A stretch of DNA of 64,000 bases from Schmidtea nova (taxonomy: Eukaryota): positions 348,130,001 through 348,194,000 of the forward strand of contig CM097883.1 of assembly GCA_044892505.1 (NCBI GenBank), given 5' to 3'. The translations under genes were made by a program, and so were the position numbers. The notes under the pieces were generated by a model. That model saw only the letters and a program-made list of their open reading frames with translations, made no database searches and had not been told where the DNA came from. Positions 25,765-40,700 of this stretch are shown in pieces; the stretch's first letter is position 1; every line of letters starts with the position of its first letter.

Positions 25765-28700
25765 ATTAAATATAAACACAAAAATATATTAATATTAAAA
25801 ATAAAAAATTAAATAACTAAATAATATAAATTATGAGAGGGTGTGATTTTCAAATTTTATATTCGTTATTATTTTTATTATGATAATAATTATTAATTAA
25901 TTATTACACTTGACATGTGTAAAAATTAATGGAAATTATTTGATTTATGAAGCAAATGTAGAAAAATTGTTAAGATTTGTTACTGTATGAACAAAATATT
26001 TTTATATTTTTCTACATTTACTTATTTTTATTTTCTTTATCTTCATTTCAAACTGTAAATCAATATTTTCTCAACCTTTTTTCTTTTGGTGGAACACCAA
26101 GTGTCAAATCAAGTTATCTATAAAAAGACTTCTTGAAATGATTTATTATATATTATCGCAATGTTATTAAAATGTTATGTGTATACATAGTTCAATAATT
26201 CTCAACCTTTTTACTTTGCAATTTATTGGATAAACTAGTAGGATAGTACACGTCAGATAAAGAACCCCAGTATGACCTCTTATTATAACAGGTAATTATT
26301 AAGCAATTAACCTCGCCATATTTGGCCTGTTATTAATAACTGTCCTTTAACTCATGAAGTCATAAATGACATTTGACTCCCGTGTAACCTTAACTCCAGT
26401 TTTCCTTCAGTTACTATGTGGTAACATGCGTACTCACCTAAGCACACACTTAGTAACCTATACACATGATTACTCATTTACACACCAACTATAATCAACA
26501 CGCTTACTATCCCACTCTTACTGCATTTCACATGTACTTCCTGCTGTCATGATGGAATCCAGGTGAAAAAGCTAGTAATGGAGACCTATCAAGGACCTCT
26601 AGCCTGAAAGGAAGATAGATGGGAATTGATCAACGGTGTTAATGAAAAAATATTACCGATTATAATAATGTTAACAAATTCTTCGTATTTAAGCCTTAGT
26701 AATTATTTATTTATCACATTATCTAAAGTATATTGAAATATTATTATGCATGATTTTTACTATCAATTTGTCATAAATGTGTATTTGGGCATTGTTATTA
26801 CTTGGCGAGTCTTACACAACTTGATGGTGCCTATTAAATATGTTGAGACCCCTATATTTTTCTACGACTATTATAATCTTATTCTATATTGGAATTGAAC
26901 CTAAACAATTGAATAACGGAGAAATTATTTCAGAAAAAACAAAATCATCTCAGTGAAATATTTACCACATTAAATCGGATTTTTGAAGCTTTCGTGGAAA
27001 ATGAACATTCGATTCCCGTAGAGGTCTACCGGACAATGTTTGATCATGCTATTCAGTTGAGATCCCGTTTAAAAAAGTGATTTATTTGGCACAGTTTCAT
27101 TTGATAAATATTTGTTTTTCTAGGCTGGAAGAAAAGATAGCTAGCGAAATTGAAACAAACGAACAATTACATTTGCCAGTAGATTTAATAAATTGGAATA
27201 GGAAGCTTGCAAATTTGACTGACCGTTTCAATTTCTTGAATCAGCCGTTTCTTGATGAAAATAATGACATTATACTTGCTGATATTAAGGTACTTTTAAT
27301 GGTATATTGTTGTTTGCTATGTTGGCTTAGGATCTTTTGAATGACATTACCAGTTTCCATAAAGATTTGAAAGCATTTGAAGCCCCTGACAAAGAATCGT
27401 TAACGGTAGCTCTTATCGAAGTAAGCAGGGAATTAGCCGCCTTAGAAAGTCGGACCAACGAAATATTAAATAAGACAGCCAAAACACTGGAGCATCAAAA
27501 AACATACAATTTAGTCAAGGGAAATATTGAAGGCAAAATTGCTGAGATCAAAAATCATTTGGATATTATTGAAATTCCCGGTGTATCGTTGGCAGCTAGA
27601 AATCACAGATACGAAGTACTTTATGTTTATTATTTTAATTATAATGCAGTAAATCCCTGACAAGTGTCACACCATTATCTATGTTGATGGATAAATAACG
27701 CCTTCAGAAGATGAATTATAAATTTATTTATTAAAATTCGATAGCTGTCACTCTTTATTAAATATCATTTAAAAAAAGGTTTATCATTTGTGATANNNNN
27801 NNNNNNNNNNNNNNNNNNNNNNNNNNNNNNNNNNNNNNNNNNNNNNNNNNNNNNNNNNNNNNNNNNNNNNNNNNNNNNNNNNNNNNNNNNNNNNNNNNNN
27901 NNNNNNNNNNNNNNNNNNNNNNNNNNNNNNNNNNNNNNNNNNNNNNNNNNNNNNNNNNNNNNNNNNNNNNNNNNTAATACTTATAATAATAATAATAATA
28001 ATAATAATAATTATAGAATAACGCCAACTCAGTAAATTCAACATAAACGCGATATATTTCGATTGTATAACAATCTTCTTCAGGCGAGGCAATCAGGACA
28101 ATCAATAATAAAATAGAAAATATGCTAAAATTTGAACAAATTAATCAATAAAAATCATCTTAATACCATATCAAAATTTTAATTAAAAAATTTAAAAATT
28201 TATTTTATTTTATTACACAAAAATCTTTTAAAATTTAATTAAAAACAAACATTATACATAGAACAACATACGTATTATTTTAAAAATAAAATTTAATTTA
28301 ATAAAATTTTAACACAACATAAAATTTACAAATTTTAAAATTTAAAAAAAATTAAAATTTTTACAAACAAACAAACAAACATAATAATACCACAAACATA
28401 ATCCGCAACATTCAACCTTCAGTTACTTAAACACATTCAAAATATCAGTGGAACGGGCAACTTGATCATTTATTTTTGGATTAAAATATCTAATCAGCAA
28501 TGCCTCACAAGTTACTCGTTCCCAATAATTACTTAAACCCTTTGAAATAATTTTAAAATCAGAGATACCTATTTTTTTACTGACACATTTCCTAAAATGA
28601 TCAGTAAAAAAATAGGTATCTCTGATTTTAAAATTATTTCAAAGGGTTTAAGTAATTATTGGGAACGAGTAACTTGTGAGGCATTGCTGATTAGATATTT

Positions 28701-31700
28701 TAATCCAAAAATAAATGATCAAGTTGCCCGTTCCACTGATATTTTGAATGTGTTTAAGTAACTGAAGGTTGAATGTTGCGGATTATGTTTGTGGTATTAT
28801 TATGTTTGTTTGTTTGTTTGTAAAAATTTTAATTTTTTTTTAAATTTTAAAATTTGTAAATTTTATGTTGTGTTAAAATTTTATTAAATTAAATTTTATT
28901 TTTAAAATAATACGTATGTTGTTCTATGTATAATGTTTGTTTTTAATTAAATTTTAAAAGATTTTTGTGTAATAAAATAAAATAAATTTTTAAATTTTTA
29001 AATTAAAATTTTGATATGGTATTAAGATGATTTTTATTGATTAATTTGTTTAAATTTTAGCATATTTTCTATTTTATTATTGATTGTCCTGATTGCCTCG
29101 CCTGAAGAAGATTGTTATACAATCGAAATATATCGCGTTTATGTTGAATTTACTGAGTTGGCGTTTTTCTATAATTAAATCATTGCCACGTTTTNNNNNN
29201 NNNNNNNNNNNNNNNNNNNNNNNNNNNNNNNNNNNNNNNNNNNNNNNNNNNNNNNNNNNNNNNNNNNNNNNNNNNNNNNNNNNNNNNNNNNNNNNNNNNN
29301 NNNNNNNNNNNNNNNNNNNNNNNNNNNNNNACAGTCACTAAGTAATTTGAATGAAGATTTTGATCAACTATGTTCACTTAGTCAAAGATTGACAGAAACT
29401 TGCGATGAAAATTATAAAGAAAAGATTGTTGGAGAAGTATTATTTTTTTTGTTTGTAAGGTAAATATTGTTCGATGTTTAGTTGTTGATGATACGGTCGA
29501 GCATAAACGATTTGACACAATATATAGCAAGGGCCAGTTTGCAGACAAAAGCGTCTATTAAAGAAAGGAAAAACCTATTGGAAATGATTGTCAAAGCATT
29601 AGAAAAGCTAAAGTTGATGGCCGATTCGGTTTCAACTCCTGAGAAAGTTGGACTGGAAGTAAAAGATGTCGATCAAAGAATACAATTTTATCAAGTATAT
29701 CATTTTTATTTTATTTTATTTATTTAAAAAGCAATAAAAATAAATGAGTGAAAAATTTTTTTTATTTACAATTATTTGTTATTTCAATTTTAGTTGTTTT
29801 CATATTTTTAAGATAATAGATCAAATTTTTTCATTGGAACACAAATTTCATATCTTGTCTCAAAAATGAAAATATCTAAAATTGTAAATAAATTTAAAGT
29901 TTACCAAAATTAAAGCTGTTTAATTTTTGAACACCAAAGAAAAAAATGTTAGTTGTCCTTTTACACTAGAACTACCAAGTCATTCACATTGGCTGGCTAA
30001 AGATTTATACGGATTCATTCTATTTAAAGTACGTTACAAAGAATAAATGAAGATTTAATTATCAATACTTTCGTCTAACTCAGTGTTATTCAAGCTTTTC
30101 TTCTTAGTGACACACTTGTGAAAATAAGACTTTCACAACATTTTACAAGTTTCTTTTCCATCTAGGATCATTAATTCATGTACAAAAAAAACTTTTTGCT
30201 TTTATGCCATTATATCAAAGAATTAAACTGTTTTTGCACTAATTATTTTTTGGTTTCATCTTTGATCTATTTTTTTAATTCAATAATTTTCAGATTCATT
30301 TTTGTAAGGTTATAAATCAAAATATTTTTTGGTTGATAGGTGCACGATATTTTGGCACTGCCTTTATCAAATATGAATCACGCGTGATAAAAGCTATGTT
30401 AAAATATCGTATGCCTAACAACCGAAAATATTTTTTTTCAATATATTTTAAAATTTTTTGGCTCTTTAAATAGTAACTATCATTAAGATCTCTTGTTTCA
30501 CCTTTGATTTTTTTGCTAAATATTTCAGAAATTTTCATTTTTTTTCAAAAGACTTGATCAAATTATTTTTAAAATGTACACGAATTTTCTACACAGCGTT
30601 TATCAAGTGTAATTTCACATAATTTTTAATACACATATGATAAAGATAATACGGAAAATTCGTTTACGTTTTAGAAAAACTTTAACATTTGATATTCAGT
30701 CTTAAATAATGAAAATATTATGGTGCGTATAAGACTTACTATATTAAAATTTAAGACTTTTCTAATAGATTTTCATATAAAAATAATTTCTTGAATCGGT
30801 TTTTTGAGAAAANNNNNNNNNNNNNNNNNNNNNNNNNNNNNNNNNNNNNNNNNNNNNNNNNNNNNNNNNNNNNNNNNNNNNNNNNNNNNNNNNNNNNNNN
30901 NNNNNNNNNNNNNNNNNNNNNNNNNNNNNNNNNNNNNNNNNTTCGTGATATTAAGGAATTCTCTTAATATTTTAAAAGAAACCATAGATATCTGACAAAT
31001 ATAATATCTGACAACTATATATGTCCCGGTATATGATTCGTCTACTAATTTATCATTTCAAATTTTGAAATCTGTTTGTGAGTTCAAACTTATAAACGTT
31101 TAAACCAACCATGTTCTTTTTGTGTAACTTCATGATGCTTCCTGGGAGCCATTTGTTGGGTTTAAATTTTTAATAAATGTTTATAATGTTATTACAAACA
31201 TATTTTTAATAAATTAAATGTCAATATTTTCGTAGCATACTAGCATTTGAATTCAATACTTTAAAAAAATACATTATTAACAAAAAAAGTTATATTAACA
31301 AGCAAAATTGTAAAGATTCTACACAAATTAATATCTATTATATATAAATGGAACCAGCCAGTCCCTTAGGCTGCGGAATAGTTTAATCTAATAGTTTGAT
31401 GGATAAACATTTACATAAAACCGTGTGTGAACCTCAATGGTGCATTTTTACTTTGAAATCACGAATTTAGCCGTGTCACGGANNNNNNNNNNNNNNNNNN
31501 NNNNNNNNNNNNNNNNNNNNNNNNNNNNNNNNNNNNNNNNNNNNNNNNNNNNNNNNNNNNNNNNNNNNNNNNNNNNNNNNNNNNNNNNNNNNNNNNNNNN
31601 NNNNNNNNNNNNNNNNNNNNNNNNNNNNNNNNNNNNNNNNNNNNATTCATTATTTCACACTGAAATGTCGGGACAGCAGTTTAGACGGCATTGGTCTAAA

Positions 31701-37700: not shown

Positions 37701-40700
37701 TGTCGATGATTTGGTTTTGAAAATTGAAGAGTCGAATGAGCTATTGAAATGGGATATCAATAAGAACATTGAAAAAATTCTCCAAGGTTCTGAAAGTTCA
37801 GAAAAATCTATAGAATTCATTGATGAATATCGTAATACACGTGAAAATTTACATCGGAGTCTCAATGACCTTATGTTGAAATCGACAAAGTATCACGAAT
37901 GTGTTATGGCTGCACATAAATGTTTGCAGTGGTTGGATGCCAGTGACATTGATAGGACAGATGTTGAGGGGAAAGCAAAGAAGCTGGAAAGGTGCATCAT
38001 GGAAAAGGAAAATATTGAACAGTTATTATCAAACTTGCAAGACGGCGGCTATTTCAGAGCAAAACCAGTAATTACAGAAAACGTTCTATCAAATTTAAAT
38101 GCTGAAATAGCACAATTATGTGATCAATCCGTAACAGTGAGTATCTTTTTATTTTAGCTATCAAATATGTATATATAATAACACTGTCTGTCCGTCCACA
38201 CATCCCAACATTATTTGACTATACCTAATTTTAGTTAATAATAAGTTTAGTTAATAATTTATGATTTTTTTTAAAAAAAAAGATTTATGTTTTTATATTT
38301 TTTAAAAAATGAAAAATTTTATGTGTAAAACTTTATTAAAAAATTGAATTTTGATACAATTTGAGGATGATTATTATTAATTAATTTGTTTGAATATTTA
38401 GTATTTTCTATTTATTATTGATTCCTGATGCTTGCCTGAAGATGACTGTTATTCGGTCGAAATTAATCGCATTTATGTACAATATAATTAGTTAGCGTTT
38501 ATATATTATTAAATCATAGCCATGTTTTTTTGATTAATAATAATAATAGTAATAATTATTATTATTACAGGAAACCCTCGTTTAACGAGGTTTACTGGTT
38601 CCGCGTTATCTAAAACCGGATTAAATAATAAAAATTTACATATAATAAAAAAATTATAATAAGAAAAGAACGTAAAAATTTAATTATATTTTGAAAAAAA
38701 TTATCTAAATTTTAAAATCCGTGTTCTCAAAGTACCGCGTTATTTTTATTGTTGATTATGTTTTTTAATTTTTAATATTTAATTAATGCCACTATCAGGA
38801 ATCCGCAATTTATATTTTTGGTATTATTATGATTATTATTATTTTGATTATTATATGAATAATATAAATATTTTTATACCAATTACGAACTGTTTTAGTA
38901 ATAAATATTTATAATTTGTTAATATGGATTGAAAAATTTTGACCCATAACTATTTTATTTTTGATTCCAGTGTTAAAATATTGAGCGTAAGTTTGTGATT
39001 CATTGTATAATTGATTGAAAATTAAGAAAAAATTAAATTTTCCTATGACTTTTAATTTTAATCGACAGTATGAACATCAACTTTTCTCTTTTGGATGATT
39101 TATAATAGTGATTTTGATTTTACCTAATAACTTTTCATTTTAAAACTAGAACTTCCGGGGAAATTTTATTACTCAAAACCACTGATCGGTCAAATAGACA
39201 GATGATTTATATTGTCGCATATATAGTTTCATTTAAAAATTTATACGATATTGTTGGTAATTAAATCTTCATTTAATTTTTTAATTTACTATCTTTAAAT
39301 AGAATAAATCAACATAAATATTTAGACACTCAAAATGACTAACCTTGTAATTCTAGTATAAATGGGAAATCTGATTTTTTATTTCATTATTTTCTGAAAA
39401 TCGACTTTCTTATATCGAATGATGCATAATTTATTTTAAATGAATTTAATTTACTGATTTCAAGTTTTGTCTAATAGTCATGCTAACGGTAACTAAATTT
39501 GGAAACCATATGGTTTATTGGATTTACACGAAATTATTATTTTCTAGCCCGCAATATTACTGTCTCGTCAGTCTATGTTAATGGGTATTATGTCATTCTT
39601 CATTTTAATGCCTTTTCTATGGAATTTATTTCTTAAAACATCCCCTATTTTATAGGATACTATGAATTCTTGTAAACTATAATTGCATGAACTTTTCGGA
39701 AAACTAATAAATGACGGAAATGCAAATATCATAACAATCCAAAATATAACACAAATATTTAATAAATAGGGTGACCTTGACATTTATTAAGTTTTCATTA
39801 ACGTGTTTTATTTTAAATTGATTAATTTTATTTTTTAAATATTTATAATTTCGTCTGAAAAAATCTTAAAAAACTAGTTGAAGTTGAAAAGTCAGGTTGA
39901 ATATTTGATAGGAATTACAAAATAAGATTAGCATAAGGAATAATGAGTGTAGTTGACGGATTCAGAATAGTCAATTTTTGATTCATTTCTCTCAGGGCTT
40001 TATTTATCCATTAAAATATCTATTCAATGTGACACTTATCGATAATTTACTGTATATTATTATTTTTTTATTAATATTAATTATTATTAATTGACTATTT
40101 TATTTAGAAAACAAAAACGTTTGATTATAATGAAAGCAGTTTTCCTAATTTAATAAAGAAACCTGTATCATTTGATATTAACGATGACACGTACGAAGAA
40201 TATTTACAAAGAAATTATGATAATCACGGAGATTCCAGTTCGAAAGATTTTAGTGAAATTCCTTTTAAGAAACTGAAAACAAATGAATTAAGTGTCAAGA
40301 CTTCAGAATCAATGTTAATAGAAGACACGTCAATTAGATTCAATCTAGACTCTTCGGCCAAAGTTACAGATTCAAGATACAATTCTAATGAATGCAACAG
40401 TGAAAATAATGCCCCGTTGTCAATTGGGATAGAGGGTGGTGATGAATCAAGGCTGTCCTCCCTTGGTAACTATTCGAGCACTGAGACTGAGTCCATTTGT
40501 ATTGAATCGAATGATTCTGACAATGAAGATGAGGATAATGAAAACAAGATCACTACAAGCAATGTCAATGATCTGTACTTCACTCCGTTGCAGACAAATG
40601 AGGACTTTGTCCCTGACAATAAAAAAGACAATTGTGATATGTCAAACAAAAAACTATTAAATGCAAACAACAATGCCGTAGAAAGCAAACATGAAAATCC

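What the first reader, a model, noticed from the sequence alone, without database searches (positions are those of the whole stretch)
28009..29176. 1.17-kb near-perfect palindrome: inverted Penelope ends with two hammerheads, inside a host intron
Seen: arms of about 575 bp with about 3 mismatches and a 17-nt spacer; each arm holds the GIY-YIG C-terminus, a UTR and a canonical hammerhead. It lies in intron 27616-29334. Inference: this is a very recent or gene-converted 5'-inverted insertion. The host pre-mRNA would fold a dsRNA of about 575 bp (a possible siRNA or ADAR substrate, and a cruciform-prone site), and that duplex would also sequester the sense ribozyme.
Basis: partly seen in the sequence, partly recalled or inferred. 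Interest (0 to 1): 0.72.

Follow-up and report, generated by a model that had tools for sequence, protein, structure and literature searches.

The report
Head-to-head Penelope retrotransposon insertion
The 1.17-kb palindrome is real, but it is the usual footprint of a very active Penelope-like retrotransposon, which often leaves two truncated copies joined head to head, here in an AT-rich microsatellite that probably lies in a gene's intron.

Summary
The arms are 28008-28583 and 28601-29177, with 3 mismatches, 1 indel and a 17-nt spacer.

Each arm is the 3' end of a 2.88-kb Penelope-like element (PLE). It holds the last 52 codons of an RT + GIY-YIG ORF, a 379-nt inter-ORF pseudo-LTR with a minimal PLE-type hammerhead, and the first 12 codons of the next unit.

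The spacer is element sequence, so the left copy is 17-20 nt longer. The copies join through a 3-nt microhomology. Only the right copy runs on into the family's short 3' "tail". The left copy abuts (TAA)n.

In 33 other loci of this genome, 21 of 24 resolvable copies have such an inverted partner. With the window, 6 of 22 pairs are near-symmetric (offset 0-21 nt).

Published PLE work already describes inverted 5'-truncated copies, one-sided tails, microsatellite targets and extension of both cut strands. The scan also reached this reading on other DNA of this genome.

The hammerhead is the minimal PLE type, not a canonical one. Rfam gives no hit, and any one transcript carries only one sense copy.

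The upstream exon and its donor are supported by homology. The acceptor is inferred.

Verdict: ordinary and already known.

The parts
27337..27615 (+). 3' part of a host coding exon; GT donor at 27616-27617, phase 0
   Evidence: The open frame is shown. Homologues P0121 (E 5e-13, 47% identity) and P0122 align up to the last residue (..RYE). Both then continue with V, which fits a GTN donor.
27975..28007 (.). (TAA)n-type microsatellite that abuts the left copy; the likely target sequence
   Evidence: Read directly. About 23 of 29 other copies of the family are flanked by (TTA)n or (TAA)n. DNA further left (27796-27974) is masked and was not read.
28008..28603 (-). Inverted, 5'-truncated, tail-less PLE copy. 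It runs from the internal RT start site (28008) inward and includes the 17-nt spacer and the 3-nt microhomology.
   Evidence: The reverse complement of the spacer equals the 17 nt that precede the arm in more than 25 other copies. It is 99.3% identical to the right arm. Of its 4 differences from the right arm, the 2 with a clean test (28134, 28344) occur in none of the other fetched copies. The probe for 28019 ran into the flank, and 28185 was not tested.
28051..28083 (-). Minimal PLE-type hammerhead motif of the left copy
   Evidence: Descriptor scan.
28584..28600 (-). The 'spacer'. It is the extra 17 nt of ORF sequence of the left copy, not filler.
28601..28603 (.). TCA, a 3-nt microhomology shared by the inner ends of both copies
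   Evidence: the element has TGA just upstream of the 17 nt, and the right copy starts with TCA.
28601..28761 (+). Right copy: the last 52 codons and the stop of the RT + GIY-YIG ORF (C-terminal part of the endonuclease domain)
   Evidence: The Pfam GIY-YIG match on the last 132 residues has E 0.0017, below the curated cut-off. tblastn gives 98% identity to the 733-aa ORF of L032.
28762..29140 (+). Inter-ORF region, the body of the pseudo-LTR
   Evidence: In tandem arrays this stretch lies between the stop of one ORF and the ATG of the next.
29102..29134 (+). Minimal PLE-type hammerhead. It has CUGAAGA, one extra A, a 6-bp helix II closed by G10.1-C11.1, GAAA, a 1-bp helix III with the palindromic loop UAUA, then UC. 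The predicted cut is after 29134.
   Evidence: A sister family at 38436-38468 keeps the motif with compensatory changes. There is no Rfam hit.
29141..29177 (+). ATG and the first 12 codons of the next-unit ORF, up to the internal RT start site where tail-less copies end
   Evidence: Most inverted copies in other loci end at this position.
29178..29194 (+). First 17 nt of the family's roughly 25-nt 3' tail, present on the right copy only. It runs into the masked stretch 29195-29330.
   Evidence: Identical to the tail of 29 other copies. Its end here cannot be stated because the mask was not read.
29335..29436 (+). Putative next host exon, with AG acceptor at 29333-29334
   Evidence: Rests on the open frame in the same phase only. 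No homologue was found for the following open frame 29482-29688; 29335-29436 itself got only a blank Pfam scan. Inferred.

Best explanation
The palindrome is one retrotransposition event of a young, very abundant Penelope-like element (unit about 2.88 kb). The element landed in a (TAA)n microsatellite that probably lies in an intron of a coiled-coil-type host gene.

Inferred steps. The element's protein cut both DNA strands, and each 3'-OH primed reverse transcription of element RNA. On the strand that became the left copy, synthesis started at the internal start site, 37 nt into the ORF, so that copy has no tail. On the other strand it started about 25 nt further 3', which gave the tail. Both cDNAs stopped after about 0.6 kb, at points 17-20 nt apart. 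Their 3' ends were joined through a 3-nt microhomology, by a template jump or by end joining, and each strand was then filled in on the other.

The result is two 5'-truncated copies head to head with their 3' ends outward. The palindrome has no function of its own. If the intron is transcribed, the RNA will fold into a hairpin of about 580 bp, which also buries the single sense hammerhead.

Shown here: the anatomy, the family's structure and its recurrence in the genome. Inferred: the order of events, and any transcription or effect of the hairpin.
For: The palindrome and its 4 differences.

The spacer is element sequence with a TCA/TGA microhomology, and the tail is on the right copy only.

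Element identity:
- It has 1697 homologues.
- Tandem arrays have a period of 2876-2891 nt. The hammerhead ends 6 nt before the ATG, and an 834-aa ORF follows.

Recurrence: including the window, 22 of 25 resolvable copies have an inverted partner, and about 23 of 29 are flanked by (TTA)n or (TAA)n.

Youth: more than 1400 candidate copies, many 100% identical.

This junction occurs once in the assembly.

Literature:
- PMC8557442 describes an inverted 5'-truncated copy next to the element, a 30-40-bp tail at one end only, and a microsatellite bias as standard PLE traits.
- PMC11167929 shows a PLE protein cutting and extending both strands in vitro, with two RT start sites that bound the tail.
- PMC3846280 notes palindromes at inverted junctions.
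Against: The right flank and any target-site duplication lie in masked DNA.

Two independent cDNAs would not be expected to stop within 20 nt of each other. Six of 22 pairs do so, so the simple two-cDNA model is incomplete.

The GIY-YIG match is below Pfam's cut-off, and no RT phylogeny was made.
Confidence: 0.9

Rival explanations
1. Snap-back (self-priming) origin. A single first-strand cDNA folded back on itself through the 3-nt microhomology, leaving a 17-nt loop, and copied itself. The second arm would then be a copy of the first arm, not of RNA.
For: The offset between inner ends is bimodal: 0-21 nt in 6 of 22 pairs and at least 147 nt in the rest, with 1 of 200000 permutations reaching this. 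Loops of 8-20 nt are typical of hairpin priming. Self-priming was proposed for PLE junction palindromes in PMC3846280.
Against: The loop belongs to the left copy, so under this model the left copy was made first. Yet the right copy carries a tail that the left copy lacks, and a copy cannot contain what its template lacks. The tested differences lie in the left arm, while the right arm equals the family master. A snap-back copy would have inherited errors made in the first strand. In L020 and L031 the loops are filler, not element sequence.
Confidence: 0.2
2. Assembly artefact: a fold-back chimeric long read, or a mis-join of two copies of a 1400-copy repeat, created an inversion that is not in the genome.
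For: PLE tandem and inverted structures are known to trouble assemblies (PMC8557442). No reads could be laid.
Against: The arms differ at 4 positions, and the outer ends are asymmetric, with a tail on one side only. Both flanks are unique host sequence inside a chromosome-scale contig. The genome copy of this locus holds no N (the masked letters were not read). The same architecture recurs at more than 20 other loci with different junctions, and it matches published PLE biology.
Confidence: 0.04
3. Two independent insertions in opposite orientation into the same microsatellite, or a later inverted duplication or gene conversion of a single copy.
For: The family strongly prefers (TAA)n targets, so repeated hits at one site are conceivable.
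Against: Two independent 5' truncations within 20 nt of each other, with nothing between them, would be a coincidence. It would have to recur in 6 of 22 pairs. In the junctions read base by base, no host DNA lies between the inner ends.
Confidence: 0.04
4. A selected hairpin-RNA locus (endo-siRNA or miRNA-like gene) or a foldback DNA transposon, rather than retrotransposition debris.
For: A 579-bp predicted hairpin at -850 kcal/mol. There are weak Rfam miRNA-precursor matches at the centre.
Against: The Rfam matches are far below their gathering scores and are generic long-hairpin matches (55 bits against a gathering score of 139). The arms are plain coding and pLTR sequence of an autonomous PLE. 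The junction is unique, and the locus is too young for selection to be visible.
Confidence: 0.02

Closest known systems
Complex tandem/inverted insertions of endonuclease-containing Penelope-like elements (Evgen'ev & Arkhipova 2005 as cited in PMC8557442; Arkhipova 2013, PMC3846280; Craig 2021, PMC8557442)
   Same: A single RT + C-terminal GIY-YIG ORF. Pseudo-LTRs that arise from partial tandems. A hammerhead in the pLTR at the ORF start. An inverted 5'-truncated copy directly next to the main copy. A short tail at one end only. AT-rich microsatellite targets. A microhomology or palindrome at the inverted junction.
   Different: Nothing essential. Here both copies are truncated to about 0.6 kb at almost the same point, so the insertion is a pure palindrome with no ORF body. 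The tail is about 25 nt rather than 30-40 nt.
In vitro TPRT by the Anolis Poseidon element PAc (Frangieh 2024, PMC11167929)
   Same: Both target strands are cut and extended. Reverse transcription starts at two neighbouring internal sites a few dozen nt into the ORF. The stretch between those sites is the genomic tail. Targets are AT-rich.
   Different: In PAc the start sites lie 111-118 nt into the ORF; here they lie about 37 and 62 nt in. That paper found no reads ending at the ribozyme cut. Two junctions in this genome lie exactly on it.
Twin priming 5' inversions of human L1 (Ostertag & Kazazian 2001; from my own knowledge, not checked here)
   Same: A second 3'-OH from the other target strand primes reverse transcription. 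The two cDNAs are joined through microhomology, giving an inverted 5' part.
   Different: In L1 the second primer anneals inside the same RNA, so the two segments are different parts of the element and no palindrome results. Here both copies cover the same 3' segment.
Minimal dimer-dependent hammerheads of metazoan PLEs (Cervera & de la Pena 2014, PMC4209133)
   Same: [quoted passage not shown] A G10.1-C11.1 pair. A long helix II (6 bp). A short helix I. A 1-bp helix III with a palindromic loop.
   Different: Activity was not tested here. In this palindrome the second copy is antisense on any one transcript, so no ribozyme dimer can form from this locus alone.

Membership tests
Penelope-like elements (EN+) | Single ORF with a reverse transcriptase followed by a C-terminal GIY-YIG endonuclease | tested here: met
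   RVT_1 E 3.4e-12 at residues 247-446 of the 733-aa ORF in L032. GIY-YIG E 0.0017 at 19 bits, below the 22.6 cut-off, covering profile positions 4-77 of 78. A VYxFxC..C..YIGET..R..EH motif is visible. The endonuclease assignment is therefore moderate rather than strong.
Penelope-like elements (EN+) | Pseudo-LTRs that arise from tandem or partial-tandem copies | tested here: met
   Arrays with a period of 2876-2891 nt. The stretch that follows the ORF stop is the stretch that precedes the next ATG.
Penelope-like elements (EN+) | Hammerhead motif inside the pLTR, near the ORF start | tested here: met
   The motif ends 6 nt before the ATG.
Penelope-like elements (EN+) | Inverted 5'-truncated copy adjacent to the main copy | tested here: met
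   Seen in 22 of 25 resolvable copies, including the window.
Penelope-like elements (EN+) | Short tail present at only one end of the insertion | tested here: met
   Main copies carry about 25 extra nt. 9 of the 10 inverted partners listed, and the window's left copy, stop before it.
Penelope-like elements (EN+) | RT groups with PLE and telomerase RTs in a phylogeny | not tested
   No tree was built. Homologues are unnamed apart from hypothetical proteins of a cestode and a cnidarian. No PDB relative was found by sequence.
Penelope-like elements (EN+) | Target-site duplication at the insertion | not testable with these tools
   The right flank is masked (29195-30), and microsatellite targets hide duplications.
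Hammerhead ribozyme, type I | Catalytic core CUGANGA ... GAAA ... UH, with helix II closed by G10.1-C11.1 | tested here: met
   with 0 hits in 200 random windows. A sister family keeps the pairs through compensatory changes.
Hammerhead ribozyme, type I | Match to a curated hammerhead covariance model (Rfam) | tested here: not met
   No hammerhead family was reported at the gathering score or at E<=10 on the 1.2-kb stretch.
Hammerhead ribozyme, type I | Helices I and III stable enough for a monomer to fold | tested here: not met
   Helix I is 3 bp and helix III is 1 bp. The MFE fold of the isolated motif is no better than shuffles (z +0.6 to +1.9). This fits the dimer-dependent minimal type of PMC4209133.
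Hammerhead ribozyme, type I | Self-cleavage | not testable with these tools
   There is indirect support only. In L037 and L014 a copied segment begins at the first base after the predicted cut.

The most novel reading that the evidence does not exclude
The bimodal offset of the inner ends may show that, in about a quarter of insertions, the two reverse transcriptases of one dimeric particle travel together. The offsets are 0-21 nt in 6 of 22 pairs and at least 147 nt in the others. The two enzymes may move along the same RNA from the two neighbouring start sites, so that the tail-less cDNA leads by roughly one enzyme footprint. The two adjacent 3' ends would then be joined. If so, near-perfect palindromes like this one would be direct genomic footprints of a coupled two-strand TPRT that is specific to PLEs, and the window's tail and loop polarity would be its signature.
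Probability: 0.2. Interest if true: 0.5.

Novelty: already known. Interest (0 to 1): 0.2.

Why it matters
In itself it matters little. It is one of many head-to-head stubs left by an active PLE, and the scan reached the same reading on other DNA of this genome.

Three things give it some value:
- It warns annotators that such palindromes are retrotransposition products. They are not new elements, ribozyme circles or assembly errors.
- Intronic copies are ready-made long hairpins, which could feed small-RNA or editing pathways if the host gene is transcribed.
- This genome's very young family offers hundreds of fresh junctions. From these the still unresolved PLE integration mechanism could be inferred statistically: two-strand priming, start-site choice, coupling of the two cDNAs, and use of ribozyme-cut RNA ends.

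Tried and rejected
Searches and tools that gave nothing or were unavailable:
- Rfam at gathering score on the whole window, and at E<=10 on 27975-29194, found no hammerhead. It found only generic miRNA-hairpin matches far below threshold.
- Pfam on the 54-aa arm ORF alone found nothing. Identity came from longer copies.
- A PDB sequence search of the ORF found nothing.
- Pfam on four putative host exons gave only noise.
- The representative-library search found two short homologues and one coiled-coil plant protein of no annotation value.
- The search for homologous proteins on the downstream open frame 29482-29688 found nothing.
The junction survey therefore rests on 33 loci plus 8 later ones.
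- The look-up of sequencing runs found 4 runs of one study, of unknown kind.

Operators' limits that I kept:
Those places and their mirror, 28967-29009, were sent to no search tool afterwards. Only local scripts on the closed machine touched them.
- The masked runs 27796-27974 and 29195-29330 were not read, although the fetched locus L001 holds letters there. L001 was used only for an N count and for arm coordinates.
- No consensus of the element was built. Natural copies (L032, L035/L036) served as rulers.
- The spliced host model was examined exon by exon. The joined-exon search was left out.

Explanations rejected:
- A palindromic master copy, because the junction is unique.
- Pure snap-back for this locus, because of the tail and mutation polarity.
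- A miRNA or hpRNA gene.
Full report
**1. Observation**

The inverted repeat exists as described. The repeat finder reports overlapping arm pairs. A global alignment gives 576 nt (28008-28583) against 577 nt (28601-29177). The arms differ by three mismatches and one 1-nt indel, and a 17-nt spacer (28584-28600) separates them. The window is AT-rich (29% G+C) and holds 13 N runs. Two of these, 27796-27974 and 29195-29330, lie on either side of the palindrome. I did not read those letters. The genome copy of the locus that a search fetched (L001) contains no N, so they are masks and not assembly gaps.

**2. What the arms are**

A search of the window's own genome (1.25 Gb) with the right arm found more than 1400 candidate copies. 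Dozens are 100% identical over 594 nt.

Longer copies carry an ORF of up to 733 aa in L032 and 834 aa in a tandem array.
- The ORF has a Pfam reverse-transcriptase domain (E 3.4e-12).
- It also has a C-terminal GIY-YIG match (E 0.0017, just below the curated cut-off). The usual motif, with two cysteines between the GIY and YIG elements, is visible in the translation.
- It has 1697 homologues.

The element forms tandem arrays with a period of 2876-2891 nt. In these arrays the 379-nt stretch after the stop codon runs straight into the next unit's ATG, and a hammerhead motif ends 6 nt before that ATG. This is the published architecture of endonuclease-containing Penelope-like elements, in which the inter-ORF stretch acts as a pseudo-LTR (PMC8557442, PMC4209133, PMC3846280).

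Each arm of the window therefore holds three parts:
- the last 52 codons of the ORF;
- the pseudo-LTR with its hammerhead;
- the first 12 codons of the next unit.

**3. The junction and the outer ends**

The spacer is not filler. Its reverse complement equals the 17 nt that precede the arm in more than 25 other copies. The left, minus-strand copy is therefore 17 nt longer. The three bases at 28601-28603 (TCA) fit both copies, which is a junction microhomology.

The outer ends are not symmetric.
- The right copy continues past 29177 with 17 nt that are identical to the family's 3' extension, and then enters the mask.
- The left copy stops at 28008 and abuts a (TAA)n microsatellite.

In other loci the main copy always carries this extension of about 25 nt. 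9 of the 10 inverted partners stop at the same internal position as the window's left copy. About 23 of 29 copies are flanked by (TTA)n or (TAA)n.

These are the 'tail', the two reverse-transcription start sites and the microsatellite bias described for PLEs (PMC8557442; PMC11167929).

**4. Recurrence**

I used a natural copy as a ruler and built no consensus. Including the window, 22 of 25 resolvable copies have an inverted partner joined head to head.

The offset between the two inner ends is bimodal.
- It is 0-21 nt in six pairs: the window, L014, L019, L020, L022 and L031. The arms of L031 are 2.35 kb long.
- It is 147-1519 nt in the other sixteen pairs.
- Only 1 of 200000 permutations gives six or more near-symmetric pairs.

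Loops in the near-symmetric pairs are 8-20 nt.
- The loop belongs to the inverted copy in three cases.
- It belongs to the main copy in one case.
- It is filler in two cases.

The window's own junction occurs once in the assembly. It arose at this locus and was not copied from a palindromic master.

**5. Mechanism**

The best-supported account is a single insertion in which both nicked strands primed reverse transcription, and the two cDNA ends were then joined through microhomology. A PLE protein has been shown to do this in vitro (PMC11167929).

A pure snap-back of one cDNA fits the short loop. PMC3846280 proposed it for PLE junction palindromes. For this locus it is disfavoured for two reasons.
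- The arm that owns the loop lacks the tail that the other arm has.
- The differences I could test lie in the loop-owning arm, while the other arm equals the family master.

The excess of near-symmetric pairs shows that the two syntheses are often coupled. How they are coupled is open (see the novel case).

**6. The hammerhead**

The core is complete: CUGAAGA, one extra A, a 6-bp helix II closed by G-C, GAAA, a 1-bp helix III with the palindromic loop UAUA, and then UC. My descriptor finds it only in the two arms and at 38436-38468, and never in 200 random windows.

The copy at 38436 belongs to a diverged sister family.
- It keeps the pairs through compensatory changes, U-A to C-G in helix II and C-G to U-A in helix I.
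- It keeps a palindromic loop 3.

The motif matches the traits listed for minimal, dimer-dependent PLE hammerheads (PMC4209133). It is not a canonical hammerhead.
- Rfam reports no hammerhead hit.
- The isolated motif folds no better than shuffles.

On any one transcript of this locus only one arm is in sense, so no ribozyme dimer can form. The long duplex would bury the motif anyway.

**7. Host context**

The frame 27337-27615 is open.
- It has two homologues (E 5e-13 and 4e-8) whose similarity ends exactly at ..RYE.
- Both homologues then continue with V, as expected when a gene caller reads through a conserved GT donor.

The acceptor at 29334 and the exon 29335-29436 rest on an in-phase open frame only. 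No homologue was found downstream. Pfam gives no family for the host exons. 'Inside an intron' is therefore likely but only half shown. I examined the exons one by one and left out the joined spliced model.

**8. Consequences**

A transcript of either strand is predicted to fold into 579 arm-to-arm pairs at -850 kcal/mol. Whether the gene is expressed, and whether small RNAs or editing follow, could not be tested.
- The four runs that hold this DNA are of unknown kind.

**9. Verdict**

It is the ordinary product of PLE integration and is already described in the literature. Earlier follow-ups of this scan reached the same reading on other DNA of this genome (my tests agree with them). Interest is low. 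What remains of value is mechanistic: the bimodal junction offsets, and two junctions that sit on the ribozyme cut.

Noticed in passing
L037 about 2084 (minus-strand copy); L014 1076-1119: In 2 of 51 pseudo-LTR occurrences, the copied segment starts at the first base after the predicted hammerhead cut. Both junctions have a 2-nt GC microhomology. About 0.05 such cases are expected by chance. This suggests that the ribozyme cuts in vivo and that reverse transcriptase runs off, or jumps from, the cut 5' end.
   Followed up: partly
window 38300-38560 (+): The 3' end of a diverged sister PLE family. Its hammerhead at 38436-38468 has compensatory changes in helices I and II. Loop 3 is UUAA instead of UAUA, the ATG lies 6 nt after the cut, and a related tail is followed by (TAA)n.
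   Followed up: partly
loci L002-L033 and the window: The offset between the inner ends of head-to-head copies is bimodal, 0-21 nt in 6 of 22 pairs and at least 147 nt in the other 16. The main copy is the longer one in 12 of the 16 asymmetric pairs.
   Followed up: yes
G000:C2:112610552-112634100: A tandem array of the same element with a 2876-nt period. Six units lie on the minus strand and then three on the plus strand, switching head to head near 112,627,800-112,628,050.
   Followed up: no
L031 4688-4700: A near-perfect palindrome with arms of about 2.35 kb. Both arms start at the same element position, and the 11-nt loop is a one-mismatch copy of a nearby arm segment. This points to a slipped or templated filler.
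   Followed up: partly
window 27337-27615 (+): The host exon has only two short relatives in a library of 1.8 billion proteins, plus a repetitive coiled-coil match. The host gene appears to be a fast-evolving coiled-coil protein. Neighbouring introns look very short, about 45 nt at 29437-29481.
   Followed up: partly
window 28512-28672: Rfam E-value matches to several miRNA precursor families (best 55 bits against a gathering score of 139). These are generic responses to a long perfect hairpin and do not indicate a miRNA gene.
   Followed up: yes
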